DNA of 64,000 bases from IMGVR_UViG_3300030419_008158:186001-250000; one strand, 5' to 3'; counted from the stretch's first letter, positions 1-41,731 are shown. Notes: generated by a model from the sequence alone, not told the origin. Made by a program: numbers and translations.

Positions 1-140
1 TGCGCCTTGCCCAGCCAGTCGGTGGCCGCTTGTTTTGACCCCTTTGCCGGCCAGAATGGTGCGTGCTTATCTCGCCTCTCGAGAAGACGGGCCTTCTCTT
101 CTTTGATGATTCTTCTGAGTTGTCGCTTTGAGATTCTCAT
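1..140 (-). CDS. leader-family A protein, partial (runs off window)
   Basis: Translated by hand: MRISKRQLRRIIKEEKARLLERRDKH...; not in ORF track. Confidence 0.8.
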   Translation of the reverse strand, partial: MRISKRQLRRIIKEEKARLLERRDKHAPFWPAKGSKQAATDWLGKA

Positions 141-143
141 TAT

Positions 144-344
144 CTATGCTTCTGCCTCTATAGTACCTTGTTCATATCCAGCATCATACGCCTGTGGATA
201 TGTTGAGCGATCAGCATCGTTTGGATACCCCTGATAAGCATCATCATACCCGCGATCGTACTCTTGATCTTCATCCCTGTTGGGGCTCATCATTCTAATC
301 TCTTCCTTGATGATCCTTCGCAGTTGTCGCTTGGTGATTCTCAC
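144..344 (-). CDS. leader-family A small acidic protein
   Basis: MRITKRQLRRIIKEE leader; YDxGY repeats; AGAGGA RBS. Confidence 0.8.
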   Translation of the reverse strand: MRITKRQLRRIIKEEIRMMSPNRDEDQEYDRGYDDAYQGYPNDADRSTYPQAYDAGYEQGTIEAEA

Positions 345-357
345 GGTTTATCCTCTT

Positions 358-966
358 TTAAGCTCTAAAGGCATCTCGAACATAGTCGGTTGCGTAGTCA
401 ACGGCAGATTCCTTTTCGCCCTCAGACTCGGCGTACTCAATATTAGCAAGGGCATCGAGTGCCTCATCAACCTCAAACCCCGTACCCAAGTTTCGAACCA
501 TGTCTTCCAATTGAGCCAATGTTGCTGAATCGTTAGGGTTTCGTGATAGCTTGCTCAGCAGATCACTAGCTTGATCGTAAGTTGCTCGGCCACCAGATCG
601 ATTGTCGTCTACTACGTCCTGCACAAATGCGATCATTTGGTCAATAGGTTGTGATGGAGTATCAGAGTCTTCTTCGGAAACTGTGTGATAGCCTGCAGCT
701 TTAAGAGTGTTTAGCGACTGCAACTGTGCTTCAACACCGTCACGGGGCACCGGGCCGCCACCAAACTGCCTAGCAACATCATCATCGGTCATTGCGACGT
801 TATTTCCGTCTAGATACCAAAAACCCTGTGCTAAATCAGCATGACCCTTTTTGTCCATCTGCTCCATCAATCTTCTGCGCACAATTCTACGAATCTTCTG
901 CTCAGCCAGAACTTTGGCTTTCTCTTCTTTGATGATTTGTCTTAGTTGTCGCTTGGAGATTTTCAT
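358..966 (-). CDS. leader-family A protein (double leader)
   Basis: MKISKRQLRQIIKEEKAKVLAEQKIRRIVRRRLME; AAGGA RBS. Confidence 0.85.
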   Translation of the reverse strand: MKISKRQLRQIIKEEKAKVLAEQKIRRIVRRRLMEQMDKKGHADLAQGFWYLDGNNVAMTDDDVARQFGGGPVPRDGVEAQLQSLNTLKAAGYHTVSEEDSDTPSQPIDQMIAFVQDVVDDNRSGGRATYDQASDLLSKLSRNPNDSATLAQLEDMVRNLGTGFEVDEALDALANIEYAESEGEKESAVDYATDYVRDAFRA

Positions 967-981
967 GTTGTTTTTTCCTTC

Positions 982-1371
982 TTACGTCATCTCGACAAAT
1001 TCGTCAAAGTCACCAGCTGCGTAAGGATCACCCCCTGCATACCAGTTGACAAACCAGTCCTTGAGCATTCCAACATCACCCGCGACGTCGAGCATGCTGT
1101 ACCCGCTTGGGCCGGTCCCCCTGTCTGTAAATCTCAGACCACGATATCGGGGGTTTCTTGTCATCTGCTTGAATGGACCACTCTCATCACGTATTTCCCC
1201 GTGTTCGTCCATCATGTCTAGGCCTCGAATTATTCCCTGTTGACCGGTTGGCTCAGCTGGTCCTCGCATCTTGATAGCTTGTTCAGCGATACGACGGACC
1301 TTCTGTTCAGCCAGGACCTTGGCTTTCTCTTCTTTGATAATTCTTCGAAGCTGTTTCTTTGTGATTCTCAT
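982..1371 (-). CDS. leader-family A protein
   Basis: Start trimmed to MRITKKQLRRIIKEE; TAATG overlap with upstream gene. Confidence 0.8.
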   Translation of the reverse strand: MRITKKQLRRIIKEEKAKVLAEQKVRRIAEQAIKMRGPAEPTGQQGIIRGLDMMDEHGEIRDESGPFKQMTRNPRYRGLRFTDRGTGPSGYSMLDVAGDVGMLKDWFVNWYAGGDPYAAGDFDEFVEMT

Positions 1372-1784
1372 TAGAAAAAAGCTCCTATTATGTTTAGCCA
1401 TGTGTCAAGGGTAAATCTGTCGCCGGCATCTGGGTCCATTTCGTCCGCAAGCTCATCGTCCCTGACATGCGTTACACCGTATGTGGATCTAAGCCAGTTG
1501 GCCAGCGCGACATGATCAGCCTTTGAGTCCAGATCTCCTTCCCACCAGACTGTCTTAATGCCTGGCTTGAGCTCAGGATGTGAGTCTGGGTATTGAATTA
1601 CAATACCGGAATTTTCAAGAGTACCAAGGCCGCTGGGAGGCGATCTGTAGTCTATCACTAGTGTTTCACCACCAGCCTGCTCCAATAGTTTCCTGCGGAC
1701 AATTCGACGGACCTTCTGCTCAGCCAGAACTTTGGTCTTCTCTTCTTTGACTATTCTTCTAAGTTGTCTTTTTGTGATTTTCAT
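1371..1784 (-). CDS. leader-family A protein (double leader)
   Basis: Start trimmed to MKITKRQLRRIVKEEKTKVLAEQKVRRIVRRKLLE. Confidence 0.8.
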   Translation of the reverse strand: MKITKRQLRRIVKEEKTKVLAEQKVRRIVRRKLLEQAGGETLVIDYRSPPSGLGTLENSGIVIQYPDSHPELKPGIKTVWWEGDLDSKADHVALANWLRSTYGVTHVRDDELADEMDPDAGDRFTLDTWLNIIGAFF

Positions 1785-1795
1785 TCTGTATCCTT

Positions 1796-1912
1796 TTATG
1801 CTACGTTGCACTTGCCCAGGCAGCTCTCACACGAGCAACAACCGCAGCAGCAGCAGCAGTGTGAAGATTTAAATAAGTTGCGTAGACGATGAAAAAATAG
1901 ATTTGCTGACAT
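1796..1912 (-). CDS. 38-aa cysteine-rich peptide (10 Cys)
   Basis: MSANLFFHRLRNLFKSSHCCCCCGCCSCESCLGKCNVA; AGGAG RBS 8 nt upstream; fills the intergenic gap. Confidence 0.7.
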   Translation of the reverse strand: MSANLFFHRLRNLFKSSHCCCCCGCCSCESCLGKCNVA

Positions 1913-1945
1913 GGCGTCATCTCCTGTGGTTTGTATTACGAGATG

Positions 1946-1952
1946 TAAATAT
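1946..1952 (-). promoter_or_regulatory. ATAYTTA motif (putative late promoter)
   Basis: ATATTTA about 34 nt upstream of 1912 start. Confidence 0.5.
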
Positions 1953-1985
1953 CACAGTGCGGAGAAAATGCCGCTTGCGGCGAGA

Positions 1986-2396
1986 TCATTTTTCTCCGCG
2001 AGCCTCGTCGATGGCCTCAAGTGTCTTGGTCAGAATTTGCAGCGCGAGATTGTCTTTGTCCGCTGCTTTGCTCATTTTGTGAAGAGCTTCGACCAGATCA
2101 CCCATTTGATCGGCGTTCTCTTTAATTCGACCGATCGCATCATCGAGCGCCTGAAATTGATCGTCGTGTGCTTGCGCTTTTAGAACCATCATATCCTGTG
2201 TGCTCATGCTCGGCGCGGAATAGTGATTCTGAACGACGGAGCTTTCCTCACGATCAGATCTTTCGGCGACGGGCGCTGATGAAGGGGACGTCGACGTGTC
2301 CTGGACTCTCTCTGGATGTTGCTGCGTCTTCGACGACTCTTGCGCCGGCTGCACAACGTATGGATTTAGAAGCGGTGATACTGAACTGACTGTCAT
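1986..2396 (-). CDS. hypothetical protein, low-complexity N-terminus and helical C-terminus
   Basis: ORF track 1986..2450; start trimmed to MTVSSV. Confidence 0.65.
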   Translation of the reverse strand: MTVSSVSPLLNPYVVQPAQESSKTQQHPERVQDTSTSPSSAPVAERSDREESSVVQNHYSAPSMSTQDMMVLKAQAHDDQFQALDDAIGRIKENADQMGDLVEALHKMSKAADKDNLALQILTKTLEAIDEARGEK

Positions 2397-2453
2397 TTTT
2401 GGCCTGTGTCTTTCCCGGTCGGGATCATAACCTGTCAAGGGCAAATACAACGC

Positions 2454-2460
2454 TAAGTAT
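2454..2460 (-). promoter_or_regulatory. ATAYTTA motif (putative late promoter)
   Basis: ATACTTA upstream of 2396 start; a TTGTAC-N17-TATAAT variant also lies at 2494..2522. Confidence 0.45.
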
Positions 2461-2779
2461 CCTTTTTCATGCGCGCAAGCTTGCGCCTATAAAATTATAC
2501 TCGAAATCGACAACCTGTACAACAATATTCTTAAGAGCCGGCTGTGCCGGCTCGAGCGAGCTAGCGCAGAAGAAAAGAGGCCGCGGCCTCGTCATCCCGT
2601 GGCGCGAAACGCCACCAAATCCGAGGCCAAACAGATGTCAACCCGTTTTCGACACCGCGTAGAGGCTCCAGATTGAATCCAGAAAGCTCTAGGTGTGTCT
2701 CTAATGAATCGGGCATGGAAAAATGGGTTTACCTAAGGGGCGTTCGATAAGATTCCTTAGAAGATCACCCAGAGCGAGA

Positions 2780-3217
2780 TCAAGTCGACCGGTCCCAGGG
2801 ACGATTTCGAGTTCCGCCGCCGTAGGGTTTTTTCGGTCGAGGTTTGGGTGGGTTCGCCGCTCTTTTCTGCTTGAGCGCGTCCCGATAGGCCAGCACCAGA
2901 TCTTTTAGCTCGGCGCCGGTCGGATATTCTATCCCGGGGCGCATTTTTCTCGCGTGAAAGGACGCCGCGTTCGGACTAACGCCCAAAGCGCCAGCCAATT
3001 CGCGCGCCGCTTGCACGTCTCCGGGCGCCGCGACCATGCCGCTCCACAGCCTCGCCAAATCGTCCAACTCGCCGTCGGATCGTCTTGAGAGAAAACCCAA
3101 CCAACTTTTTAGCGCGAGGTCTCCCTCTCGGCGCAGCCGATCGAACTCCTCGATCGCGTCTTGAGTCTCCAGGGTTTCGGCAATGATCCGCCGCAGCTGT
3201 TTTCTTGTGATCTTCAT
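2780..3217 (-). CDS. leader-family A protein
   Basis: MKITRKQLRRIIAETLE leader. Confidence 0.8.
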   Translation of the reverse strand: MKITRKQLRRIIAETLETQDAIEEFDRLRREGDLALKSWLGFLSRRSDGELDDLARLWSGMVAAPGDVQAARELAGALGVSPNAASFHARKMRPGIEYPTGAELKDLVLAYRDALKQKRAANPPKPRPKKPYGGGTRNRPWDRST

Positions 3218-3423
3218 TCTATGCACCCCGTTTTTCGGCAGTCGCCCGCGTGTTTAGCGCAGGGATCTTTCTTCATGTCTCGATTTAGAATGGTTCGACC
3301 CTTGGGAGCCCGAAGGCCCGCAATGAGCTCCTCGAACAGCTTTGGGTCCAGACCGGGAGGTGTGCCCTCCAGCTTTTCGGCTAGCTCGCGTATTTCGGCG
3401 AGACGACTCTTTCTATCGCTCAT
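3214..3423 (-). CDS. hypothetical protein
   Basis: MSDRKSRL...; GGAGA RBS; ATGA overlap downstream. Confidence 0.6.
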   Translation of the reverse strand: MSDRKSRLAEIRELAEKLEGTPPGLDPKLFEELIAGLRAPKGRTILNRDMKKDPCAKHAGDCRKTGCIE

Positions 3424-3425
3424 AT

Positions 3426-3746
3426 TCAGTTCTCCAATTCTTGTCTGTGCAGCTTGTAGCCCAAGTGATCCTCGATCTCGTGCATGTCGTCCAACATGGC
3501 AGCTAGCTTCGACCGCACCCACTCGGGCAAATGGTCGTCGTCCTCCAATCGATCGTGCAGAGACTGCGCTCTGCTGGCGATATTGAAAAGAGCTCCCCGC
3601 GACATTCGCGCGACTCCGCTGTCGATGGGATGGCCGACAGGATCGACTTTGGGCGCAGCACTCGCCGGCGGCAACGCTAACGCGCCCGCCTCCGCGGCCA
3701 CGCACTCCCTAACAATATTTCTCAGTAGACCTCTCGTGGCGCTCAT
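3426..3746 (-). CDS. phage protein with LPEWVRSKL helical motif and degenerate leader
   Basis: GLLRNIVRE leader; RMSRGALFNIA...LPEWVRSKLA resembles a motif recurrent in large-phage hypothetical proteins. Confidence 0.7.
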   Translation of the reverse strand: MSATRGLLRNIVRECVAAEAGALALPPASAAPKVDPVGHPIDSGVARMSRGALFNIASRAQSLHDRLEDDDHLPEWVRSKLAAMLDDMHEIEDHLGYKLHRQELEN

Positions 3747-3748
3747 TT

Positions 3749-4453
3749 TCAGCTCTCCTCGGAGCGATCGACGACAGCGTTCGCGCTCTCCAGAGCATCC
3801 AAAACAATGGCGCCCTCCTCACCCAAAGAATCAGCCAATCGCGATAAGCGGCGGTGCGCGATGTCCAGCGCGTTCGGGTTCTGTCTGAGCACTAGGTCCG
3901 CGAACTCCTCGTCCGCCCCGAACTGCACGTACATGTTCACAACGGCTTCCACCTGCTCCTGCACGGCGCCGCCCAGCTTGGCGTACTCCCGAGCAAAGTC
4001 GATAAGCAGGGAGCCCGACTCCTCTTCGCCACCAAAACCGTACTGCTCCGAGACAAGGCTGAGGTTGGTGTTCTTGCGGAAATTTCGACCCTCGCGCACT
4101 ACTGCCAGATACCCACCCGGAAATCCTGTCTTGAATCCTAGTTGTTCCAAGTACGCCTGGAACTCGTACGTGCGATCGCTGCTTCCGAAGCCCTCCTCGC
4201 TGTCCGCCAAGCTGTATGCCAGGTCGTCCGCGAAGTCCACGGCCATGGTGTTGATTCTCTGTCTCCCCACCGACTCGATCTCTTCGGGTGTGAGCAGATC
4301 TTCGGCGGTTCGCACGTATTCGCCCGGGTACACGACGTACTGGGTGTACTCGTCGGGGCCGTTGGCACCGAGGCCTCCGCGCTCGTCGAGCCTCCGCGTG
4401 AAAGCGGACTGCGCGCGCACGATCTCTCTAATCATCTCTTTGGAAATTTTCAT
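3749..4453 (-). CDS. leader-family A-like acidic protein
   Basis: MKISKEMIREIVR leader; 234-aa ORF. Confidence 0.75.
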   Translation of the reverse strand: MKISKEMIREIVRAQSAFTRRLDERGGLGANGPDEYTQYVVYPGEYVRTAEDLLTPEEIESVGRQRINTMAVDFADDLAYSLADSEEGFGSSDRTYEFQAYLEQLGFKTGFPGGYLAVVREGRNFRKNTNLSLVSEQYGFGGEEESGSLLIDFAREYAKLGGAVQEQVEAVVNMYVQFGADEEFADLVLRQNPNALDIAHRRLSRLADSLGEEGAIVLDALESANAVVDRSEES

Positions 4454-4503
4454 GAACGGAGTGGCTCCTGTCTTTTAGCATCTTGCAAGTCGATGTCTGA
4501 GGG

Positions 4504-4510
4504 TAAGTAT
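4504..4510 (-). promoter_or_regulatory. ATAYTTA motif (putative late promoter)
   Basis: ATACTTA about 51 nt upstream of 4453 start. Confidence 0.5.
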
Positions 4511-4789
4511 GGCCTGAACGGGGAATTGTGTCTTTCGGAAAATTTTTTGAGAACTAGGGCCCTTTGCGACGGAAATCTTCCGGAAAAAAATTTTTCGAAG
4601 AGACCCCTTTTGAAACTGTCGGCGCTCCCAAAATTTTTTTTTGACTTGGGACCTAGCCCATTTTGGCCCTAATGTACACTGAGTTTGGGCCCCTTTTTTG
4701 GGCCCCCTGGGAGGGGCTCTAGAAGGCCCCCCGAAAGACCCCCCTTTGCCGGGCCCCCTGTATGCCTTTTGCCAGCTCGAGCCAGCCAT

Positions 4790-4822
4790 AAAAAAAGGGG
4801 CCCGATCCGAAGACGGGGCCCC
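4790..4822 (-). terminator. intrinsic terminator
   Basis: GGGGCCC-stem with cUUCGg loop followed by T7. Confidence 0.75.
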
Positions 4823-4863
4823 TAAAGAGCTAGCCGCGCCGGAGTCGGCGCCGCTCGGAGAGA

Positions 4864-5610
4864 TTAGGCAGAAATCTTGGCCACCACCTTGAAGCCGTTC
4901 TTCTTGAGGTCCAGGTAGAAGCGGTGACCCGCGCCACCGAACCGGTTCTTGGTCATCTCGAGGATTCGGCAGCCGAACAGCTCGGACCGCTGGTCCTCCT
5001 CGACCGTGAGCTCCATCATCGCGTCGACCATGTGCTTGAGCACGTTCCGACCCGCAAACTTTCCGTTTTTACCGACCTGGCCGATGACGATGGCGCAGGT
5101 GTTGTTCTCCTTGCACCAGTTCGTGATGAGCGACAGAGCGCGCTCCGGAGAGCGGCTGTTGGTCGAACCGTCGGCGTACTTGCCGTCGTCCATGGTCTGG
5201 AGGCTGTCCACCACGAGGACGAACTGCTTGTTGGGGTGCTTCGCTCGAAGCTTGTCACAGTTCTCGAGCAGCGTGGGGACGTGAATCTCCTCGCCCACCG
5301 CGAAACCGTTCTTGAGGCGGAGTCGCTCCGCTGTAAGCTTGACCTGGTAGAGACTCTCCTCACCGGTGTTGAAGACCCCGATGGCTCCGTTGCCCACCAG
5401 GCTGTCCACCAGCTTGAGCATCATTGTCGTCTTTCCCGCGCCCGGAGTTCCGGTGAACAAGGTCACCGACGAGGGCGTGATACCTTGACCGCCGAACGAG
5501 CCGTCGATGTAGTCCACGTGGGTCTTGATCCGAGTGCGAAGCGCCTTGGGCACCTCCACGTCCAGGATGTTAGTGCCAAAATCGAATCCGTTCTTAGTGT
5601 TGAGCTTCAT
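4864..5610 (-). CDS. RadA/Sms-like RecA-fold ATPase (ATPase domain only)
   Basis: GTPGAGKTT, GEES, VVDSLQT, HMVD, KNRFG signature; no Zn finger or Lon-like domain. Confidence 0.85.
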   Translation of the reverse strand: MKLNTKNGFDFGTNILDVEVPKALRTRIKTHVDYIDGSFGGQGITPSSVTLFTGTPGAGKTTMMLKLVDSLVGNGAIGVFNTGEESLYQVKLTAERLRLKNGFAVGEEIHVPTLLENCDKLRAKHPNKQFVLVVDSLQTMDDGKYADGSTNSRSPERALSLITNWCKENNTCAIVIGQVGKNGKFAGRNVLKHMVDAMMELTVEEDQRSELFGCRILEMTKNRFGGAGHRFYLDLKKNGFKVVAKISA

Positions 5611-5683
5611 TATCTCTCTCTCTCCAGTGTCGTGGTCTCTCGACCGGTTTAGCTCTCCGTCCCCTCTCCCCGGGAACATATCT

Positions 5684-5712
5684 ATTATACACCATGTGTT
5701 TGGCGCTTACAC
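5684..5712 (-). promoter_or_regulatory. GTGTAA-N17-TATAAT promoter
   Basis: Exact motif, repeated across window. Confidence 0.8.
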
Positions 5713-5716
5713 GTTT

Positions 5717-6235
5717 TTACTCACTTATTGGACTGACACTGAACTTTTTGTGCCATTCCTCGACACCGTTGACCAGCAGGCGCACGTAGGAGTCTTCCAT
5801 GCCGCGCTTGATCCAAGCAGGGCGGTTCTTCTTGCTGCGCCCGGGCCTAGAATCATCTTCTGCTACCACAATCCCGATATCGCCGTTCTTCGTCTCCATG
5901 AGATTCCCCGGGGAAAAGTCCGCGGACCACTCGACCTTGACCTCTTTGTGGGTTACTTCGGACAGCGCCTCTCGGTCGACAATCTGTATTCGATTGGTGA
6001 TGTTCTTCTTGGACTTACGCTTATGCTTTCTGCGCGCCTTAGCATTCTCGAACGCCACCTCTGAGGGTTGTGGGTTTTCTTCCAGCCACCGGTCATACTC
6101 GAGACCAGATATTTCGCCAGCGTTGAGCTTGTCTGTCATTTCTGCCAAACCCTGCTCCCACTCAGCGTCTCTGTTCTCTCTCGCTTGAGCTAGCACGTCC
6201 TGTTGGTGAAATCCTCTTATGTGTCTAGACATCAT
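5717..6235 (-). CDS. hypothetical protein with C-terminal SH3/KOW-like module
   Basis: FSPGNLMETKNGDIGIVV; AGGAG RBS. Confidence 0.7.
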   Translation of the reverse strand: MMSRHIRGFHQQDVLAQARENRDAEWEQGLAEMTDKLNAGEISGLEYDRWLEENPQPSEVAFENAKARRKHKRKSKKNITNRIQIVDREALSEVTHKEVKVEWSADFSPGNLMETKNGDIGIVVAEDDSRPGRSKKNRPAWIKRGMEDSYVRLLVNGVEEWHKKFSVSPISE

Positions 6236-6271
6236 ATTCTCCTGTTATCCCCTCTCCCTGGGTACATTTTT

Positions 6272-6300
6272 ATTATATCCTACCCCGGGCCGGATTACAC
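6272..6300 (-). promoter_or_regulatory. GTGTAA-N17-TATAAT promoter
   Basis: Exact motif. Confidence 0.8.
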
Positions 6301-6352
6301 AAAAAAAAAGACCGGCTGGAATCCCGGAGAGAGAGTGGGAAACCAGCCGGTC
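6301..6352 (-). terminator. intrinsic terminator abutting next promoter
   Basis: GACCGGCTGG...CCAGCCGGTC stem followed by T9. Confidence 0.75.
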
Positions 6353-6401
6353 GCGAAGGGCGATACGGTATATTGGGAGAGCCGAACCGCCCGGGAGAAC
6401 C

Positions 6402-7487
6402 TTAGCTATTGCTCAGCTCGCGAGCCTTTCGAATCAGCTCAACAATCTCGTTACCGACCCGAGCATGGAGTGCCTTGATGGGACCCATGTTCTTGGTAGC
6501 CATGATTGCGTTCCACATGTGAACCATCTGCTCGGAGGGAAGACACCGAGCGAAATCAACCACGTTGTCCGCCTGGTTGTCGTCCCAGTCGTTCTTCGAA
6601 GCGTGGTCCACGATCTTGTCCAGAACGGTGAGGCTCTCACTGGCCTTCATCTTCTTGGCAACCTTAGCTGACACGTTTCCGGACAGCACATCATCCGCAC
6701 TGATTTGCTTCTCGTACTTGGCAACGAACTCAGAAAAAGCGATCGCAGCCTCGGTACCGACGAACCCTTGTGCCAGGGCGTAGAATCCCTCGGGACGTGA
6801 GCCGGCAACAGAGCTGGGCGACCAGCCCATGTGCTGGAGGCTGGTGTCCAACCGGTGCCAAGAAGCAGGGTTGGGAGCGATCGTACCGGGCTCAACAGCT
6901 CCGACATCGACTCGGAGGTGCGCAGGGTTCTGCTTGACGAAGTCGATCGTCACAGGGTCGACTCCCGCATTGGAAGCCCAGCTAGTCCAGTCGCTCGTGG
7001 TGGGCTCGAGGTCCACCGTCCAGAAGCGACGAAGAAGTGCCGGGTCCATGTCGTTGACATCGTACTCGGCGCCGTGGTTGACCGCAGCGAAAATACGAGT
7101 CTCGGGATGGAGCTCCATGGGATTACCGTCGGCATCGTTACCGAGGGACCGGTCCAAGACGACCTGGAAAAAGGCCTGCTGAACCTGAGGCATCGAGCGA
7201 TTGAGCTCATCGAGCATCACGACCACAGGCTCCCGGCAGCCTCGAACGAACCAGGAGGGGAGCACGAAGGTAGCCACACCGGACTCCTTGCTCACCTCAA
7301 AATCGGGAATACCCGTCACCTTGGACTCGTCCATGGTCGACCCACGAACATCGATGAAGGGGAGGCCGAGCTCTTTGGCTGCGGCCGCGGCCAGATGGCT
7401 CTTACCGACACCGGTCGGTCCCCGCATAAGAACAGCGATCTCTGGGGGAAGCTTCGTGGCCAGGCTTTTGAAAGTTTTGATGTCCAA
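6402..7487 (-). CDS. MoxR/dynein-related AAA+ ATPase
   Basis: GPTGVGKS Walker A, MLDELNR Walker B, AAVN sensor 1, DPALLRRF Arg finger. Confidence 0.88.
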   Translation of the reverse strand: MDIKTFKSLATKLPPEIAVLMRGPTGVGKSHLAAAAAKELGLPFIDVRGSTMDESKVTGIPDFEVSKESGVATFVLPSWFVRGCREPVVVMLDELNRSMPQVQQAFFQVVLDRSLGNDADGNPMELHPETRIFAAVNHGAEYDVNDMDPALLRRFWTVDLEPTTSDWTSWASNAGVDPVTIDFVKQNPAHLRVDVGAVEPGTIAPNPASWHRLDTSLQHMGWSPSSVAGSRPEGFYALAQGFVGTEAAIAFSEFVAKYEKQISADDVLSGNVSAKVAKKMKASESLTVLDKIVDHASKNDWDDNQADNVVDFARCLPSEQMVHMWNAIMATKNMGPIKALHARVGNEIVELIRKARELSNS

Positions 7488-7549
7488 TTCTCTCTCCTAT
7501 CTTTTGATCTTGAACGTTTCTCTTCGTTCCCCTCCCTGGGAACATATCT

Positions 7550-7578
7550 ATTATACACCAGGTGCGGTGTCTTTACAC
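7550..7578 (-). promoter_or_regulatory. GTGTAA-N17-TATAAT promoter
   Basis: Exact motif. Confidence 0.8.
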
Positions 7579-7613
7579 AAAACTAAATAACTTTTTAGTA
7601 GCAGCGAGCAAAA

Positions 7614-7826
7614 TTACACCTTTCTTAGTTCATTTTCATGAACTGTTCGAACGCGACCGGTCGAGAAGCTCATGGATATCTCTACCCATTTGCCTTTAAC
7701 GTTTAGCACCTCACCAAGCTGATCAGCGGGAATACCGTTAATCTTTGGCTGTCTCTTGGACTTCCCACGTGGGGGTGGTTGTGGCTTTACAAAAGTCACG
7801 AGGTCGCCTTCACTAAAAGATTTCAC
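7614..7826 (-). CDS. GDLV-family small SH3/KOW-like protein
   Basis: FSEGDLV...GEVL pattern; AGGAG RBS. Confidence 0.65.
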   Translation of the reverse strand: MKSFSEGDLVTFVKPQPPPRGKSKRQPKINGIPADQLGEVLNVKGKWVEISMSFSTGRVRTVHENELRKV

Positions 7827-7906
7827 TTACTTTCTCCTATCAAGTACTTCCAAATGTAAATAGCTGCCGCAAAACCTACAATTAATTCAAACACTTATGT
7901 AACCTC

Positions 7907-8125
7907 TTATGTTATCTTTTTACACACACCCTGACGGGCCAACTCACTCAACATCGTGCACGAAACATCTGTTATCTGCCCACTTTTTCTGAGTATCGTA
8001 TAGTTGTACAGCGCGTAAAGTGTGTCTCCTTTTTGAACTCTTGTCACGTCAACTATTGTGACAATTTCTGCATCCTTCGCCGAGCCTAGGAGAAGCAAGT
8101 CCCCAGGATCGTATTCGGGATTCAC
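7907..8125 (-). CDS. GDLV-family small protein
   Basis: YDPGDLL; GTGA overlap with upstream gene. Confidence 0.6.
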   Translation of the reverse strand: MNPEYDPGDLLLLGSAKDAEIVTIVDVTRVQKGDTLYALYNYTILRKSGQITDVSCTMLSELARQGVCKKIT

Positions 8126-9360
8126 GTCTTTTTGTTAGCGCGACTCATTTTCGCAACTGAATCCAGCCGGTCCGGTGCAAACAAAAGCTTTGTGCCGGGA
8201 ACCAACAGCCAGCAGCGCTTGAGCTTCGAGGGCTTTGGTTTTGCTGCCTCACCGTCTGTGATGATGATGTAGCCATCAAACCGATGACGGTTCTTGTTTG
8301 CATGAGAAGTGACACAGTCAAAATCCGTTCCACCGCAGCGGGTTCGTCCCGCCTGAGGTGTGCGATTCTTCTTCCACAGTGTCTCAGACTTCTCATCGAC
8401 TTCAGTGTCGAAATGGAACGTGGTAAACTCGGTTCTCTTTGCGAGAGAACGAAGCTCTCCGAACGCCTGCTCGAGCTCAGCATTTCCAACTGAACCGCTC
8501 TGGTCGATGTAGACCGCAATAGATGATGTGTAACCACGCTTAGCGCCGGTCGCCATGGGTCCGTGCTTCGGGTGAAGATGAACGACATTGACGTTAGACC
8601 ACGTCGTGGACCGTGTCCCTCGCTTGGACATTCCACAGAACTGCTTGAGAATGGCGCGCCAATCGACTTCATTTGAGACCATTTCTCGAAGCTTGCTGCG
8701 CATGCTGCCGCCAACAGATCCCCACTTACCCGTGCGATCTGCCTCTTTGACAGCCTCCTTGAGGACTTCTTTCATCTTGCCTTTAACAAGAGCTTTTTCC
8801 TCATCGGTCATTTCTCCCCAGCCACCGTGGTCATCGAAGCCGTTGCCCTCGCCCTCAGCTTGTTCCTTGGCTTCCTCGTCCTGCATAATCTGGGTGAAGT
8901 ACCACTCCTGAGACTTGTGCTTCGGAAGCGTGGAAATAAGCTTTGCGAGAGGGGAGTCCGCACCCGGTGACTCGGGATCGATCTCTTTGCCCGGGACGAG
9001 GCCACCATCTGGAAGCTCAGACGCTGGAATATCGGAGTTGATAGCCAGGTCAGCCGCGATGTTGGCGACGTTGTGGGGCTCGAGCTTTCGCGACGTGCAG
9101 TGCTCGAACGCCAAGTGAAAGCACTCGTGTTTGAGCAACCCCTTGACATGATTATCATTTAAGTCCGAGATGAAGTCCGGGTTGACCAGCATGTGGACGT
9201 CCGCATCCTTCACCATCACACCCGCAGTGGGAATGTCGTCGCCGAACTCGATGTTCACGCCGCGCAAAATGCGAGCGAAGAACGGCTCGTCGAACATCAT
9301 ACGCAGCAAGTGCGGTGTGAGGTCTTTGTTGTTTTCGATTCTTCGAGCTGCTTGGGTCAT
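8122..9360 (-). CDS. HExxH metallopeptidase-like plus VWA domain protein (DUF2201-type partner of MoxR ATPase)
   Basis: HECFH, NIAADLAIN, DQSGS MIDAS, GGTDF, IITDG. Confidence 0.85.
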   Translation of the reverse strand: MTQAARRIENNKDLTPHLLRMMFDEPFFARILRGVNIEFGDDIPTAGVMVKDADVHMLVNPDFISDLNDNHVKGLLKHECFHLAFEHCTSRKLEPHNVANIAADLAINSDIPASELPDGGLVPGKEIDPESPGADSPLAKLISTLPKHKSQEWYFTQIMQDEEAKEQAEGEGNGFDDHGGWGEMTDEEKALVKGKMKEVLKEAVKEADRTGKWGSVGGSMRSKLREMVSNEVDWRAILKQFCGMSKRGTRSTTWSNVNVVHLHPKHGPMATGAKRGYTSSIAVYIDQSGSVGNAELEQAFGELRSLAKRTEFTTFHFDTEVDEKSETLWKKNRTPQAGRTRCGGTDFDCVTSHANKNRHRFDGYIIITDGEAAKPKPSKLKRCWLLVPGTKLLFAPDRLDSVAKMSRANKKT

Positions 9361-9397
9361 TTCGTCTCCTAAGTCCCCTCTCCCTGGGAACATTAAT

Positions 9398-9426
9398 ATT
9401 ATACCATGGGAGAGGTGATATTACAC
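9398..9426 (-). promoter_or_regulatory. GTGTAA-N17-TATAAT promoter
   Basis: Exact motif. Confidence 0.8.
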
Positions 9427-9439
9427 GAAATACTAGTAA

Positions 9440-9679
9440 TTATCGCGCGATCCAACGCTCTTTTTCCTCGCTGTAATCACGATAATCGTTTCCCGGGGCC
9501 GCTGTGCGTCCGGCCTGACCGTTGCGAATCGTGCACGAAGGGGGTGCAGTGCCCACAATTGCCATTCGAGTGAGGCGGCTCAGCACAAACTCGTACGAGT
9601 CTGGGTCAGTCTTGTCGCTGCAGATCATGCCGAGCAGACGAGCGACGTCGTCCCTGACTTGTTCTTCGATCTTTTTCAC
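9440..9679 (-). CDS. hypothetical protein, paralog of 17517..17714
   Basis: VRDDVARLL...KERWIAR. Confidence 0.65.
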   Translation of the reverse strand: MKKIEEQVRDDVARLLGMICSDKTDPDSYEFVLSRLTRMAIVGTAPPSCTIRNGQAGRTAAPGNDYRDYSEEKERWIAR

Positions 9680-9714
9680 GGAGTCTCCTGTGGAGTTTTG
9701 AGTGTTTTTATTTT

Positions 9715-9743
9715 ATTATACACTCTCCGCGGAAATCTTACAC
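9715..9743 (-). promoter_or_regulatory. GTGTAA-N17-TATAAT promoter
   Basis: Exact motif. Confidence 0.8.
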
Positions 9744-9784
9744 AAAAAAAAGGGCGCGCCGAGGATAAAATCTCCGACGCGCCC
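9744..9784 (-). terminator. intrinsic terminator abutting next promoter
   Basis: GGGCGCG...CGCGCCC stem followed by T8. Confidence 0.7.
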
Positions 9785-9799
9785 CACCCCCACCCGAGA

Positions 9800-10030
9800 C
9801 TACGAGTTGTTGGAGTCGCTCACATTTCCGAGAGACTCGTTCAAGAACGCCTGCAACGCAGTCGCCTCCTTGACAGTCATCTGCAGCTGGGTCGTACCGA
9901 CCGAGTACTGCTGCCCGCTTGCTGGAAGCGTCGCGATTGTGACGACATTGCTACCGGCCTTCTTGGCGGTGTCATTGCGGGAAATTCCAAATTGAAAACG
10001 ACTCGTAGTCTTAGTGCTGTTGTAACTCAT
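9800..10030 (-). CDS. hypothetical protein
   Basis: AGGAG RBS, own promoter and terminator. Confidence 0.7.
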   Translation of the reverse strand: MSYNSTKTTSRFQFGISRNDTAKKAGSNVVTIATLPASGQQYSVGTTQLQMTVKEATALQAFLNESLGNVSDSNNS

Positions 10031-32990: not shown

Positions 32991-35023
32991 TTAGGGCTCC
33001 ATAGTTTGTTACGGTCAGTGTCGTAGATCGGAACACCAAGGTCTAGTGAAGCCAACATAATCTTCTTCACTACACCTGCCGAGAAATAATCAATGTCTTT
33101 AGCTGTGTTGCCACTAGGCGGGCTCTGACCGCCAGAAATTAGTTTTTCTGCTGTTTTGAGAATAGCGTCTGTAACATCATCCTTTGCAACGATAACCCCT
33201 CTAGGTCTCCAGTTATCCACCAGGGCCTCATTATTCGACCACTCTGCACCTACCGGGTTCCACGTTGACTGGTCTAAAACGTATGGGATACCATCTCTTG
33301 CCATCTTCTCCATATATTCGTTTCCGCGCTGGAGCTGGCCGTATCGGCTGTAATCTTTTGACACAGAGGGTCGTTTGTTTCTGCCAGAAGACCGATCTCT
33401 CTGTGCAATAGCCTCCTCGTCACCTTCTGGCCCTACACCATAATCCCCGTAAAACCCTGAATACATTTTGTCTTGATCGTTTGTTGCCAGCGTTATTCGA
33501 CCTTTGATCCACAGCCCGTATGGGAGACCGGCTGCTGGCTCAAAGCTATCACCAGGGAGAGTCATTGTGGTAGAAAGCTCGTCCTTGCCTCTTCCTTTCA
33601 TGTTCTCAATGCCATAGAAATCATCAGTCCAGTGGACAGTGTCTAGGGTGCTAAGAAATTGGTGGTCTGCATTCTTGTTGAATGCGCGCTTGATATCTCT
33701 GCCAGCCTCTTTGCCGATTTGCCCACCGAAGAACTGATCGCCGAACTTATCCGATGCGGCAAGGTCATGCACGAAGCCCATGGGGTCTTCCTTGAGAAGC
33801 TGTCTCACGTATTTTCTTAAAACGTTTTCTTTCATAGCATCCTTCTTTAGCCTAATCTCTACGTCGCTCCTCCCGAAGATCCCGTCTCCGCCAAGCGCGC
33901 TTGTTATTTTGTAACCTAGAGACTCAATGCTGGCGACATCTTCTGGAAATTGTTGGGCGAACTCTTCGACTCCCATGACCGTCTTTTCAGGCATGAGACC
34001 GGTGCCGAATATTAGTTCCTCAACGCCCTCTTCCCTGTAGCTTTCGTCGAAGTTCCTAAACTCTCCACCCATAGCCTTGATGAGATCGATGAGAGGCCCA
34101 TGATCAGCATACATTTCCTTTTCGGCTTGTTTTCTTGCGCGGTCGAGGCCTCGGTGTTCGACCTCGAAGATATTGAACATTGCCACCTTTCCCTTGAGTG
34201 GGTCAAGCACTGTGTCAAACATGTCTTTGAACTTCTTTTCGTATTGCTGTGCCCTTTGGTCGTGCTTAGACCCGGGATTTAATTCGATGATATCACCGTT
34301 TTTCATGTTAAGTTGTTCTGGAACGCCGAGAACCAAGCTTCCATCGTTCTTTAGGTAGTCAGCAAAGATGTCGCCAAATAGATCAAAGTCACCACTGGGT
34401 AGTTCGATACCCGGAAACAGCTCACTCAGCAAGACGTCTGGGTTTGAGACACCAAGTCTGCGACCAGTTTTCTTCATTGAATCTCTAACATGTTCGGCTT
34501 CCATGGTTCCACCACCATGAGACAGCCAGACCAGTTCCATCATATACTCTTTTATAAGAGTTGTGAATGGGTCTTTAGCGCTGAATGATTTCGCATCACT
34601 ATTCTCAAGCATGTGGTGTAGATCATGCGCCAGATAGTGAGGGTTAACGTCAGCTATGAATGTATCTCCACCGGCAGGAACTTCAAAAGACTTAGGGTAG
34701 ACGTAAAGAAGATTGATTCCGTCTGGATCCATCTCCTTCTGTATTTTCGGGTATAGCTTTCCGATGTTTGAAATGTCAGTAAGGGCAACTTGTCCTCTAC
34801 TCTTGAACCCTGATACTTTACCCTGTATTTCATTTGGCAGTCTATGCGCCCAGCTGAGGTCGTCTGTGTGTGCGACATAGATGTTGACGCTCTGTGGGAT
34901 TGCTTTGAAGTAGTCAGCAACCTCTTCGCGGACCATTACATCGTCGTCATCCTGCTTGAGATATTCAAAGTCGTCTAGAGGGACTTCCATGAGAAGGTCT
35001 CTTATGTATTCGTGTAGTAACAT
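32987..35023 (-). CDS. leader-family B multidomain protein; C-terminal domain paralogous to 40915..41730
   Basis: MLLHEYIRDLLME leader; internal MKENVLRKYVRQLLKE; HDLHH. Confidence 0.8.
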   Translation of the reverse strand: MLLHEYIRDLLMEVPLDDFEYLKQDDDDVMVREEVADYFKAIPQSVNIYVAHTDDLSWAHRLPNEIQGKVSGFKSRGQVALTDISNIGKLYPKIQKEMDPDGINLLYVYPKSFEVPAGGDTFIADVNPHYLAHDLHHMLENSDAKSFSAKDPFTTLIKEYMMELVWLSHGGGTMEAEHVRDSMKKTGRRLGVSNPDVLLSELFPGIELPSGDFDLFGDIFADYLKNDGSLVLGVPEQLNMKNGDIIELNPGSKHDQRAQQYEKKFKDMFDTVLDPLKGKVAMFNIFEVEHRGLDRARKQAEKEMYADHGPLIDLIKAMGGEFRNFDESYREEGVEELIFGTGLMPEKTVMGVEEFAQQFPEDVASIESLGYKITSALGGDGIFGRSDVEIRLKKDAMKENVLRKYVRQLLKEDPMGFVHDLAASDKFGDQFFGGQIGKEAGRDIKRAFNKNADHQFLSTLDTVHWTDDFYGIENMKGRGKDELSTTMTLPGDSFEPAAGLPYGLWIKGRITLATNDQDKMYSGFYGDYGVGPEGDEEAIAQRDRSSGRNKRPSVSKDYSRYGQLQRGNEYMEKMARDGIPYVLDQSTWNPVGAEWSNNEALVDNWRPRGVIVAKDDVTDAILKTAEKLISGGQSPPSGNTAKDIDYFSAGVVKKIMLASLDLGVPIYDTDRNKLWSPK

Positions 35024-35024
35024 C

Positions 35025-38774: not shown

Positions 38775-38784
38775 TTTAAAGTTC

Positions 38785-40041: not shown

Positions 40042-40571
40042 GCTTTCACCATCATGGGGCTTTCTTCGTCTTTCAAGAGGATGAGATCGAATTGTGATTC
40101 CTGAGATGCGAATTTATCTTTTCTCTTAATGAAGAGGTATATCGCCGTGATTGGCATAGCGGCACCAGGTTCCATTCTTATTTCGTTTTCGTCCCAGAAC
40201 AGCCGCGGTTCTTGGCCCGCAGTAATTGGATCGTAGCCTTGTCCATCGTCGATAGTAGCCTGAAGGATTACATGAATTGTCTTGCCTCTATTCGAAGCAT
40301 CCCACACATCAGCAAATCTAACAGCAGTATGAAAAGTCTCAGACCACGAAACACCGGTGGATTCATTTTGTAGCTGACCGAGGATTAATCTTGCTCGCTC
40401 GTCGCCGCTGATTTTACCCCTACGGATTGCTGACGCTAATGATGCACTGGGCATTGTAAGCTTCATCCCTCTGTATACGTTTTTCTTGCCCTTTGTGAAG
40501 GATGGTTGTCCGTAAGCTGATGCAATCCTTTCGTTCAATAGAGACCTTATGTATTCGCGGAGAAGTTTCAT
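40038..40571 (-). CDS. leader-family B protein, R-S-E-type ADP-ribosyltransferase-like
   Basis: MKLLREYIRSLLNE; VYRGM, GVSWS....AVRFA, ENEI. Confidence 0.62.
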   Translation of the reverse strand: MKLLREYIRSLLNERIASAYGQPSFTKGKKNVYRGMKLTMPSASLASAIRRGKISGDERARLILGQLQNESTGVSWSETFHTAVRFADVWDASNRGKTIHVILQATIDDGQGYDPITAGQEPRLFWDENEIRMEPGAAMPITAIYLFIKRKDKFASQESQFDLILLKDEESPMMVKA

Positions 40572-40918
40572 TATATCTTACTCAAACTATCCGGCCATTT
40601 TTTCCATGTTCGACTGTCACCGTCAGGCTGAACCATGACGAATTTTCCGCCGCGGCGCACAACAGTCCCCACCTTTAGAGAACCGTTCTTGAGCGTCCAT
40701 TGGACCCGGTCGCCTTTTTTGAATCCGGCCTTTAATTCATTTCGCTTTCGCTTGACTGTGTCAGCCACAGCTGTCCATATGACTCGAAGATCAGCTATTG
40801 GCATCTCTTCCATTTGATCCAAGATAACTTGAACGTTTGGGTTCTGGGCAGGTGGTTCTACGGGAGCATCTGCCGTTTCCTGAATCAATTTTCTTAGTTG
40901 TCTCTTAGTAATTTTCAT
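40571..40918 (-). CDS. leader-family A protein with C-terminal SH3/KOW-like module
   Basis: Start trimmed to MKITKRQLRKLIQE; FKKGDRVQW...GTVV. Confidence 0.75.
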   Translation of the reverse strand: MKITKRQLRKLIQETADAPVEPPAQNPNVQVILDQMEEMPIADLRVIWTAVADTVKRKRNELKAGFKKGDRVQWTLKNGSLKVGTVVRRGGKFVMVQPDGDSRTWKKWPDSLSKI

Positions 40919-41730: not shown

Positions 41731-41731
41731 T

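What the first reader, a model, noticed from the sequence alone, without database searches (positions are those of the whole stretch)
1..4453. Second leader family MKITKRQLRRIIKEE on tandem acidic proteins
Seen: six ORFs (starts 140, 344, 966, 1371, 1784, 3217) plus 40918 share this basic amphipathic leader ending I-x-E. Three continue KAKVLAEQK(I/V)RRI, giving a doubled leader. Starts 3746 and 4453 carry degenerate versions. The bodies are unrelated and mostly acidic. Both sub-clusters lie downstream of ATAYTTA. Inference: a second class of packaging tag, with the conserved 5' DNA also offering a recombination anchor for exchanging gene bodies.
Basis: partly seen in the sequence, partly recalled or inferred. 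Interest (0 to 1): 0.72.

Follow-up and report, generated by a model that had tools for sequence, protein, structure and literature searches.

The report
Shared N-terminal tag on phage proteins
About 42 small, mostly acidic proteins of a 284-kb marine T4-like phage start with the same 14-residue basic helix ending in the cut site of the phage's head protease, so it is probably a new tag for loading varied proteins into the capsid.

Summary
All the genes lie on the minus strand. The leader M-K-I-T-K-R-Q-L-R-R-I-I-K-E(-E) heads window genes starting at 140, 344, 966, 1371, 1784, 3217 and 40918. It heads about 42 ORFs in the whole 284,429-bp virus record and occurs in 6,892 protein clusters from mostly marine metagenomes. 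It is almost absent from cellular genomes.

The phage is a distant T4 relative with a Gp23 capsid protein and a gp21-type (Peptidase_S77) prohead protease. The invariant leader residues are M1, L8 and E14, with I12 nearly invariant. I12-x-E14 matches the T4 protease motif L/I-x-E.

DNA identity is confined to codons 1-15. Third codon positions vary, so selection acts on the peptide. Bodies are unrelated and significantly acidic.

The leader arrays lie downstream of GATAYTTA, a motif that also precedes the portal, sheath, tube and endolysin genes. Two conserved head-module proteins carry leader-like N-termini. In a related phage, leader genes directly flank the head genes. Some tagged metagenome proteins are Mod/Alt-type ADP-ribosyltransferases.

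Best reading: a new capsid-targeting propeptide, unrelated in sequence to T4's. No proteomic evidence exists. The recombination-anchor idea is only partly supported.

The parts
1..140 (-). 5' part of a leader gene (MRISKRQLRRIIKEEKARLL...). The ORF is 241 aa, runs off the window start and contains a second, in-frame leader copy at genome 185630.
   Evidence: 38.0 bits
144..344 (-). Leader gene, 66 aa, GTG start (VRITKRQLRRIIKEEIRMM...). Body pI is 4.05.
358..966 (-). Leader gene, 202 aa, with the 'doubled' 38-aa leader MKISKRQLRQIIKEEKAKVLAEQKIRRIVRRRLMEQ.
982..1371 (-). Leader gene, 129 aa from the ATG at 1371, with the doubled leader.
1371..1784 (-). Leader gene, 137 aa from the ATG at 1784, with the doubled leader. 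AlphaFold2 gives a helix at residues 5-36, a low-confidence break at 34-39 (EQAGG), then the body.
1946..1952 (-). ATATTTA late-promoter-like motif ahead of the array 1784 -> 1371 -> 966 -> 344 -> 140.
2454..2460 (-). ATACTTA motif ahead of the leaderless acidic gene at 1986-2450.
2780..3217 (-). Leader gene, 145 aa (MKITRKQLRRIIAETLE). The body is basic (pI 9.7). A 324-nt contig from a metatranscriptome library covers 2923-3246.
3426..3746 (-). Gene of 106 aa with a weak leader-like N-terminus, MSATRGLLRNIVRE|C. Its body is paralogous to the C-terminal half of the gene at genome 1145-1750.
3749..4453 (-). Gene of 234 aa with a degenerate leader, MKISKEMIREIVRAQ (A14 instead of E14). It is homologous to a metagenome module that has a canonical leader.
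4504..4510 (-). ATACTTA motif ahead of the array 4453 -> 3746 -> 3423 -> 3217.
40571..40918 (-). Isolated leader gene, 115 aa (MKITKRQLRKLIQET), embedded among genes of the other leader family (MxLLREYIRxLLxE).
   Evidence: 42 bits

Best explanation
The leader is a capsid-targeting propeptide of a new sequence class.

Proposed mechanism:
- The roughly 14-residue basic amphipathic helix (38 residues in the 'doubled' version) docks the protein onto the acidic scaffold/core of the assembling prohead.
- The phage's gp21-type (Peptidase_S77) prohead protease then cuts after the invariant Glu14 of I12-x-E14. In the long version it would also cut at L20-A-E22 and L33-L-E35.
- The acidic body is left free inside the head, to be delivered with the DNA.
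- The tag is modular. It is attached to about 42 unrelated bodies in this genome and to thousands of bodies in marine relatives, so the genes behave as exchangeable cassettes.

Shown here: the motif and its conservation pattern, the protease, the head-module relatives of the leader, the shared upstream motif, and the modularity.

Inferred: docking, cleavage, packaging and injection.
For: 1. The genome is T4-like. It has a Gp23 capsid protein, a Peptidase_S77 protease (91.8 bits), a portal and a large terminase.
2. In 30 aligned leaders, M1, L8 and E14 are invariant and I12 is at least 90% conserved, while position 13 is free. In 421 copies from metagenomes, E14 is present in 419 and I/V12 in 417. 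T4 gp21 cuts after L/I-x-E, and in the T4 CTS the processing residues are I8 and E10 (PMC9026906).
3. The capsid protein has L58-K59-E60|A61 about 20 residues before the block that aligns with T4 gp23 residue 91. This is close to the T4 cleavage site at residue 65.
4. The genes just after the protease begin MAKI[ST]KxxLKxIVKE|CLVE|IL and K[LI]TPxLLKKLVxEEKxKLME in six related phages. hhalign against the leader profile gives E 3.9e-5 and 2.6e-4 in the same register.
5. GATAYTTA lies 6-45 nt before the portal, tail sheath, tail tube, endolysin and head-core genes, and ahead of the leader arrays at window 1952 and 4510 and genome 1767.
6. In related phage G004, leader genes directly follow the capsid gene, and three more lie just upstream of the block that holds the terminase and portal genes.
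7. All 9 large leader-bearing viral contigs tested have an S77 protease. Only 3 MAG contigs among 185,579 cellular genomes carry the exact leader.
8. A second leader family in the window (MxLLREYIRxLLxE) also ends in L-x-E at residues 12-14.
9. Some doubled-leader proteins carry PF26816 Mod_ADP_RT. This is the family of T4 Alt, a head-packaged enzyme processed by gp21 (PMC9026906).
10. Third codon positions vary, which indicates peptide-level selection. AlphaFold2 models a lone helix.
Against: - There are no proteomic, expression-timing or cleavage data for any member.
- Forty-two packaged species would be far more than the handful of T4 internal proteins.
- The leader has no sequence similarity to the T4 CTS.
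- Bodies are acidic, whereas T4 IPII and IPIII are basic (from my own knowledge of T4).
- Most of the 271-284 kb array has no GATAYTTA close by, so late transcription there relies on read-through from genome position 1767.
- Similarity to the head-core proteins is modest (hhalign probability 70% and 42%).
- Co-occurrence with the S77 protease is not phylogenetically independent, because all the contigs belong to one clade.
- The complex prediction of protease plus leader gave no answer.
- Gene 4453 has lost E14.
Confidence: 0.55

Rival explanations
1. The leader is a generic docking helix unrelated to the capsid. It would bind a common hub inside the infected cell, such as host RNA polymerase, the ribosome, a chaperone or protease, the membrane, or a phage factory. 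That would recruit many different effector bodies to one place. I-x-E would then be structural rather than a cleavage site.
For: It is a short basic amphipathic helix on many unrelated small acidic proteins. Small acidic phage proteins are often host-takeover or anti-defence factors (general knowledge). The number of members, 42, is unusually high for capsid cargo.
Against: This reading does not explain several observations: the near-absolute invariance of E14 with a free position 13; the leader-like N-termini of conserved head-module proteins; the placement of leader genes around the head genes in G004; the late-type upstream motif; or a second, unrelated leader that also ends in L-x-E.
Confidence: 0.22
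2. The conservation reflects a nucleic-acid element: a translation-initiation or mRNA-regulatory box, or a recombination or gene-conversion site in the first 45 nt. The peptide would be incidental.
For: Conservation starts exactly at the start codon and ends at codon 15. Identical codons among same-residue pairs are somewhat more frequent than codon usage predicts (0.54 against 0.40). A few pairs share exact runs of 25-43 nt. Unrelated marine contigs share only this roughly 45-nt stretch.
Against: Third codon positions are much less conserved (0.54) than first and second positions (0.79 and 0.81). Synonymous codons are used freely: CTA/CTT/CTC/CTG, ATC/ATT, CGA/AGA. The median longest exact run is 9 nt. 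Distant relatives keep the residues but not the bases. An internal copy with ATA at codon 1 keeps the peptide.
Confidence: 0.07
3. The leader is a RiPP-type precursor leader: a conserved leader with a hypervariable core, as in prochlorosins, cleaved at the double glycine of the long version and modified by the phage's radical-SAM enzymes.
For: The long leader ends in ...LLEQxGG across unrelated bodies. The window encodes radical-SAM enzymes. The general architecture of conserved leader plus variable body fits.
Against: The bodies are 50-240 aa folded-size proteins, not short Cys/Ser/Thr-rich cores. Only the doubled sub-family has the GG. No C39 peptidase is found in the genome. The radical-SAM genes lie more than 35 kb from the cluster. 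Some bodies are enzymes (Mod_ADP_RT).
Confidence: 0.03
4. The leader is a relic of serial gene duplication. One ancestral small gene expanded in tandem, the bodies diverged beyond recognition, and the N-terminus stayed conserved for a function intrinsic to that one protein family.
For: The genes form tandem arrays on one strand. A few bodies are still weakly related.
Against: The same 38-aa leader at more than 85% identity sits on at least four body types that do not align and differ in length. A Mod-type ADP-ribosyltransferase domain carries it. The boundary is abrupt, dropping to background identity within one codon. Modules recombine in different orders.
Confidence: 0.08

Closest known systems
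Capsid targeting sequence (CTS) of T4 internal proteins IPI/IPII/IPIII (MKTYQEFIAE)
   Same: Both are short N-terminal tags on otherwise unrelated proteins. Both end in the gp21 motif (I-A-E in T4, I-K-E here). Both occur in a phage with a gp21-family protease. In T-even phages the cargo set is diverse and fast-evolving, sharing only the CTS (PMC3012670, PMC9026906; the sequence itself appears in 10.1101/2021.01.19.427310).
   Different: There is no sequence similarity (-2.8 bits). This tag is 14-38 residues and strongly basic, against 10 residues in T4. There are about 42 tagged genes per genome instead of a few. The bodies are mostly acidic. Function is untested.
T4 Alt, a head-packaged ADP-ribosyltransferase with gp21-cleaved propeptides
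   Same: A Mod/Alt-family ADP-ribosyltransferase domain (PF26816) is found behind the doubled leader in metagenome relatives.
   Different: Those proteins are not in this window. Their assignment rests on precomputed Pfam hits and language-model neighbours. A direct Pfam scan gave only a weak DRAT hit, and the single-sequence fold failed.
Propeptides of phiKZ, 201phi2-1 and SPN3US head and ejection proteins
   Same: Many (19 or more) head proteins are processed after Glu by a diverged gp21 homologue. Redundant cleavage sites occur within propeptides (PMC9026906), and the long leader here has three.
   Different: Their motif is S/A/G-x-E with no common leader sequence. These are different phage lineages.
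Encapsulin cargo-loading peptides and P22 scaffold-fusion targeting
   Same: The concept is the same: a short conserved peptide directs diverse cargo into an HK97-fold shell.
   Different: Those peptides are C-terminal, are not cleaved by a gp21-type protease and are unrelated in sequence. This comparison rests on my own knowledge and was not tested here.
RiPP precursor families with shared leaders (for example prochlorosins)
   Same: Many paralogous genes share a conserved leader and have hypervariable remainders. The long version ends in a double glycine.
   Different: The bodies are protein-sized. No C39 peptidase is present, and no adjacent maturase is present.

Membership tests
T4-type capsid targeting sequence / gp21-cleaved propeptide | The tag lies at the extreme N-terminus of the precursor. 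| tested here: met
   About 40 of the 42 copies start an ORF, with an RBS-like purine run upstream. Two are in-frame internal copies of fused cassettes.
T4-type capsid targeting sequence / gp21-cleaved propeptide | The tag ends in the protease motif L/I-x-E. | tested here: met
   I12-x-E14: E14 is invariant and I12 at least 90% conserved in 30 leaders. In metagenome copies, 419 of 421 have E and 417 of 421 have I/V.
T4-type capsid targeting sequence / gp21-cleaved propeptide | The phage encodes a gp21-family (Peptidase_S77) prohead protease. | tested here: met
   Genome 82430-83035, 91.8 bits, PHROG head maturation protease at 9.8e-51. Also present in all 9 related contigs tested.
T4-type capsid targeting sequence / gp21-cleaved propeptide | The same tag is carried by otherwise unrelated cargo proteins. 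| tested here: met
   All-against-all BLAST of the bodies. Alignment A2 shows one 38-aa leader on at least four body types.
T4-type capsid targeting sequence / gp21-cleaved propeptide | Sequence similarity to the T4 CTS MKTYQEFIAE. | tested here: not met
   -2.8 bits against the leader HMM. The other leader family in the window (MxLLREYIRxLLxE) resembles it more, but only by eye.
T4-type capsid targeting sequence / gp21-cleaved propeptide | Co-expression with the head genes (late). | tested here: inconclusive
   GATAYTTA is shared with the portal, sheath, tube and endolysin genes and lies ahead of the arrays. There are no timing data.
T4-type capsid targeting sequence / gp21-cleaved propeptide | The tag is sufficient for encapsidation and is removed in mature virions. 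| not testable with these tools
   This needs virion proteomics or fusion experiments. The complex prediction gave no answer.
RiPP precursor leader (double-glycine type) | A short core peptide follows the leader. | tested here: not met
   Bodies are 50-240 aa. Some are enzyme-sized domains.
RiPP precursor leader (double-glycine type) | A C39 peptidase/exporter, or an adjacent maturase, is present. | tested here: not met
   No Peptidase_C39 in the genome, while the controls rang in 7 of 14 genomes. No enzyme genes lie within window 1-4500.
Sec/Tat signal peptide | A hydrophobic h-region of about 10 or more residues follows a basic n-region. | tested here: not met
   The sequence itself shows this: the leader is KRQLRRIIKEEK, with no hydrophobic stretch.
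phiKZ-type head propeptides | Cleavage motif S/A/G-x-E. | tested here: not met
   P3 is Ile/Val, as in T4.

The most novel reading that the evidence does not exclude
Marine far-T4 jumbo phages use a previously undescribed, sequence-distinct capsid-targeting propeptide, or two of them. With it they load dozens of different, rapidly exchanged effector proteins per virion, including Alt-like ADP-ribosyltransferases. Each tagged gene would be a plug-in cassette. This would be the largest known repertoire of virion-delivered phage proteins, and the 6,892 tagged protein clusters would be a ready-made catalogue of injected host-takeover and anti-defence factors.
Probability: 0.4. Interest if true: 0.82.

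Novelty: new variant of a known kind. Interest (0 to 1): 0.66.

Why it matters
If the tag is a capsid-targeting propeptide, one short motif would identify, from sequence alone, thousands of proteins that uncultured marine phages inject with their DNA. That class is otherwise invisible without virion proteomics. It would also extend the T4 CTS principle to a distant lineage with a different tag and a cargo set roughly ten times larger. It would offer a portable tag for loading proteins into large capsids. Finally, it would explain why about 12% of the genes of these jumbo phages are small 'hypothetical' cassettes. Full-text searches of the paper library found no description of the motif.

Tried and rejected
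- Pfam and PHROGs scans of the leader proteins found no family.
- tblastn and blastn of leader genes against GenBank phages gave nothing usable. The apparent hit in Pelagibacter phage Mosig was chance: no leader was found there.
- The T4 late promoter TATAAATA is not enriched (5 copies). Sigma-70-type promoter and terminator scans are at chance level.
- Complex prediction of protease plus leader residues 1-40 gave 'no answer', which is not evidence either way.
- The single-sequence fold of the tagged ADP-ribosyltransferase candidate P0234 had pLDDT 36 and is unusable. A PDB sequence search found no match.
- ESM Atlas neighbours of the 137-aa window protein are all unnamed.
- A first pI comparison that used crude gene starts was flawed and was redone with the correct starts.
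- I considered that the E-[GS]-K residues before internal leader copies form an extra cleavage site. I rejected this because the same pattern appears when the untranslated RBS region of separate genes is translated in frame.
- Full-text searches for the motif strings returned nothing.


Full report
**What is in the sequence**

The window is bases 186001-250000 of a 284,429-bp IMG/VR virus record that CheckV rates 100% complete. Nearly all genes lie on the minus strand (310 of 342 crude calls), and so do all the genes in this finding.

Reading the minus strand confirms the leader at these start codons:
- 140: MRISKRQLRRIIKEEK
- 344: GTG start, RITKRQLRRIIKEEI
- 966: MKISKRQLRQIIKEEK
- 1371: MRITKKQLRRIIKEEK
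- 1784: MKITKRQLRRIVKEEK
- 3217: MKITRKQLRRIIAETL
- 40918: MKITKRQLRKLIQET

A degenerate DNA pattern hits 25 times on the gene strand of the genome, never on the other strand and never in the reversed-pattern control. A 22-column HMM finds about 42 ORFs, all on the minus strand. They form two arrays, at genome 184.5-190.5 kb (the window start) and at 271-284.4 kb plus 0.1-0.6 kb (the contig ends), with the single copy at window 40918. That is roughly 12% of the genes.

**Where conservation begins and ends**

In an alignment of 30 leaders (A1), M1, L8 and E14 are invariant. I3, T4, Q7, R9, I11 and I12 are at least 90% conserved, and position 13 is free.

At the DNA level, mean pairwise identity behaves as follows:
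- Upstream it is at background (0.25), apart from a purine-rich RBS.
- Over nt +1 to +45 it is 0.70-0.76.
- From codon 16 onward it is 0.26-0.32.

Within codons 2-15, first and second positions are 0.79 and 0.81 identical, but third positions only 0.54. Among pairs with the same residue, the codon is identical in 0.54 of cases against 0.40 expected from codon usage. The median longest exact run between two leaders is 9 nt, and the longest are 43, 33 and 28 nt. Selection therefore acts on the peptide rather than the DNA.

Laying marine metagenome contigs on window 1-5000 shows depth spikes and unlike 'loose ends' exactly at the leader edges: 91/141, 923/966 and 1737-1753/1784-1785. Many unrelated contigs share only this roughly 45-nt stretch.

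**The bodies**

With the leader removed, all-against-all BLAST finds only one weak trio of related bodies, plus two trivial self-hits. The self-hits arise because two leader copies are internal to longer ORFs. One is at genome 185630, inside the ORF that starts at window 140. The other is at 274646 and has ATA at codon 1.

The bodies are acidic. Median pI is 4.9, and 90% are below 6 against 51% of other small proteins of this genome (Fisher p 4e-5). Exceptions in the window are genes 3217 and 40918, whose bodies are basic.

Gene 4453 (MKISKEMIREIVRAQ) is a genuine degenerate member. Its leader and body align at 45% identity (E 7e-31) with the third module of metagenome protein P0009, where the leader is canonical. 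It has lost E14. Gene 3746 (MSATRGLLRNIVRE) is only weakly leader-like.

**What kind of phage this is**

The genome encodes the following:
- a Gp23-family major capsid protein (genome 76443-78323);
- a Peptidase_S77 (T4 gp21-type) prohead protease (82430-83035);
- a portal protein;
- a large terminase.

The closest cultured capsid proteins belong to Flavobacterium phage vB_FspM_immuto and Microcystis phage Mel-JY01. The closest overall is the uncultured 484-kb phage LR756508. The phage is therefore a distant 'far-T4' jumbo phage from marine metagenomes.

**Why a capsid-targeting propeptide is the best reading**

In T4, the internal proteins share only a 10-residue N-terminal capsid targeting sequence. 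It takes them into the scaffolding core and is then cut off by gp21 after the motif L/I-x-E. Within that sequence, residues 8 and 10 govern processing (PMC9026906, PMC3012670; the sequence MKTYQEFIAE appears in 10.1101/2021.01.19.427310).

The evidence here falls into eight lines:

1. *Cleavage motif.* The leader's conservation pattern is exactly of that type: I12, a free position 13 and an invariant E14. The pattern holds in 421 copies from 255 metagenome proteins, with E14 in 419 and I/V12 in 417. That set was selected by score, so the figure is somewhat inflated.
2. *Capsid protein.* The phage's own capsid protein has L58-K59-E60|A61 about 20 residues before the block that aligns with T4 gp23 residue 91. 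This is near the T4 cleavage site at residue 65 and suggests the protease specificity is retained.
3. *Head-module relatives.* Two conserved genes lie immediately downstream of the protease, where prohead core proteins sit in T4. In six related phages they begin MAKI[ST]KxxLKxIVKE|CLVE|ILxE and K[LI]TPxLLKKLVxEEKxKLME. Profile-profile comparison with the leader gives E 3.9e-5 (probability 70%) and E 2.6e-4 (probability 42%). Both alignments are in the register that puts the leader's E14 on the head proteins' V-K-E or V-x-E. In this genome, these two genes are the only genes outside the arrays whose N-termini score above about 7 bits with the leader HMM.
On the gene strand it is the most enriched upstream 7-mer. 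Twenty-six of its 45 copies lie in the 5.8% of the genome that is intergenic, against 3 of 19 on the other strand, and G precedes it in 21 of 27 cases. It sits 6-45 nt before the start codons of the portal, tail sheath, tail tube, endolysin and a head-core gene. That is the layout of a single-element late promoter. Copies lie at window 1952 (ahead of 1784 -> 1371 -> 966 -> 344 -> 140), 2460 and 4510 (ahead of 4453 -> 3746 -> 3423 -> 3217). Another lies at genome 1767, ahead of the tightly packed array that leads into the second cluster.
5. *Gene neighbourhood.* In related phage G004, four leader genes directly follow the capsid gene. Three more lie just upstream of the block that holds the terminase and portal genes.
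6. *Distribution.* The tag is viral. It occurs in 59 IMG/VR stretches, usually in several copies. Five related 240-290-kb contigs have 16-29 leader ORFs each. All 9 large contigs tested carry an S77 protease. Only 3 MAG contigs among 185,579 cellular genomes have the exact leader.
7. *A second leader family.* The window holds a second, unrelated leader family, M[KN]LLREYIRxLLxE, at starts 36182, 36775, 37557, 40571, 41730 and 43770. It also ends in L-x-E at residues 12-14.
8. *An Alt-like cargo.* Four metagenome clusters with the doubled leader carry PF26816. The Atlas names this family Mod_ADP_RT, the T4 ModB-type ADP-ribosyltransferases, and the nearest language-model neighbours are ADP-ribosyltransferases. 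T4's Alt is a head-packaged enzyme processed by gp21 (PMC9026906); that it belongs to the same transferase family is from my own knowledge.

AlphaFold2 models the 137-aa window protein with one helix over residues 5-36, a low-confidence break at 34-39 and then the body (overall confidence is modest, pLDDT 60). The leader does not look like part of a shared folded domain.

**The long leader**

The 38-residue version, MKITKRQLRRIIKEEKAKVLAEQKVRRIVRRRLLEQxGG, is conserved at more than 85% identity on at least four body types that do not align with one another. Identity collapses right after the GG (A2). It contains three L/I-x-E motifs (IKE14, LAE22, LLE35). This recalls the redundant cleavage sites in phiKZ propeptides (PMC9026906).

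**Modularity and the 'recombination anchor'**

The metagenome search found 6,892 clusters (at 50% identity) with the leader at E <= 0.001. Many of these proteins have two to four leader-body modules in one ORF. Internal copies keep Met in 68% of cases. They also keep RBS-like codons upstream, and the same pattern appears when the untranslated upstream region of separate genes is translated in frame. They are therefore in-frame fusions of neighbouring cassettes.

Modules also occur in different combinations. P0009 joins relatives of two genes that lie 85 kb apart in this genome, 275030 and window 4453.

The contig's first 392 bases are an imperfect copy of its last 421 bases:
- Bases 281-392 match 284318-284429 at 96%.
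- Bases 1-114 match 284009-284122 at 91%.
- The body between them is unrelated.

This is what a cassette swap between two leader-bearing flanks would look like, although tandem paralogy cannot be excluded.

Cassette exchange is therefore real at the protein-module level. However, the DNA identity available in most leader pairs is too short to call the leader a dedicated recombination site.

**Rivals**

- *Docking helix for an intracellular hub (0.22).* This fits the helix and the acidic effectors but not the E14 pattern or the links to the head module.
- *Nucleic-acid element (0.07).* The synonymous variation argues against it.
- *RiPP-type leader (0.03).* Body size and the absence of a C39 peptidase argue against it.
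- *Simple duplication relic (0.08).* The sharp boundary and the unrelated bodies, including an enzyme domain, argue against it.

**What is missing**

No member has been seen in a virion, no cleavage has been shown, and expression timing is inferred from a motif. The complex prediction gave no answer. No cultured phage with several copies was found: immuto has one weak copy, and P-HM2, Mel-JY01 and Mosig have none. Full-text searches found no description of the motif.

**Verdict**

The most likely reading is a new, sequence-distinct variant of the T4 capsid-targeting propeptide, carried by an unusually large and widespread cargo repertoire (confidence 0.55).

Noticed in passing
window 33829-43770, minus strand (starts 36182, 36775, 37557, 40571, 41730, 43770; weaker 35026): This is another N-terminal leader family, M[KN][LI]LR[ED]YI[RS]xLLxE, on larger proteins (177-678 aa) with no Pfam match. 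It also ends in L-x-E at residues 12-14. By eye it resembles the T4 CTS MKTYQEFIAE (REYI against QEFI) more than the leader studied here does.
   Followed up: partly
genome-wide; window copies at 1952, 2460, 4510, 44148, 45652, 49691: GATAYTTA on the gene strand is a late-promoter-like element. Twenty-six of its 45 copies are intergenic, 6-45 nt before the portal, sheath, tube, endolysin and head-core genes. The canonical T4 late box TATAAATA is not enriched.
   Followed up: yes
L074:1-392 and L071:14009-14429 (genome 1-392 and 284009-284429): The contig start is an imperfect copy of the contig end (96% and 91% identical flanks), but the gene body between the two leader-bearing flanks is unrelated. 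This is either allelic cassette replacement in a permuted genome or diverged tandem paralogues.
   Followed up: partly
window 1796-1912, minus strand: A 38-aa ORF with a good RBS spacing lies directly after the ATATTTA at 1952. It reads MSANLFFHRLRNLFKSSHCCCCCGCCSCESCLGKCNVA (12 Cys) and is encoded partly by a (CTG)5 repeat. It could be a Cys-rich peptide or just a simple repeat.
   Followed up: no
window about 2000-10000: This stretch has 53-57% G+C against about 40-42% in the rest of the window. It holds the degenerate-leader genes (3217, 3746, 4453), a KaiC/RecA-like ATPase, an AAA_5 ATPase and a DUF2201 metallopeptidase/VWA protein. It may be an acquired island.
   Followed up: no
window 4454-4863: This is a 400-nt intergenic stretch full of homopolymer runs (GGGGCCC, A7-9, T6-7), just upstream of the ATACTTA at 4510. 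No function has been assigned.
   Followed up: no
window 47197-48651, 41732-43045 and 58818-60464: The phage encodes a full-length ATP-dependent PEP carboxykinase (Pfam E 8e-170) and two radical-SAM enzymes (one lysine-2,3-aminomutase-like, one B12-binding). These are unusual auxiliary metabolic genes.
   Followed up: no
window 3426-3746 and L074:1145-1750: The body of gene 3746 is paralogous (34% identity, E 8e-15) to the C-terminal half of the first gene after the GATATTTA at genome 1767. The conserved block is RGAL(F/R)NIA...LxDxDxLPxW...YKLxRQ. Both genes sit near the head of a leader array.
   Followed up: partly
metagenome proteins P0234, P0236, P0237 and P0241 (not in the window): The doubled leader is fused to a Mod/Alt-type ADP-ribosyltransferase domain. 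Support comes from the precomputed PF26816 hit, R...S-x-S...E-x-E motifs seen by eye, and Atlas neighbours scoring 0.96. A direct Pfam scan gave only a weak DRAT hit.
   Followed up: partly
L099 (NHDW01000006.1, a 305,838-bp contig of a 'Methylococcaceae' MAG): The exact leader occurs on a 306-kb MAG contig. The contig may be a mis-binned jumbo phage of this group, but I did not check its other genes.
   Followed up: no
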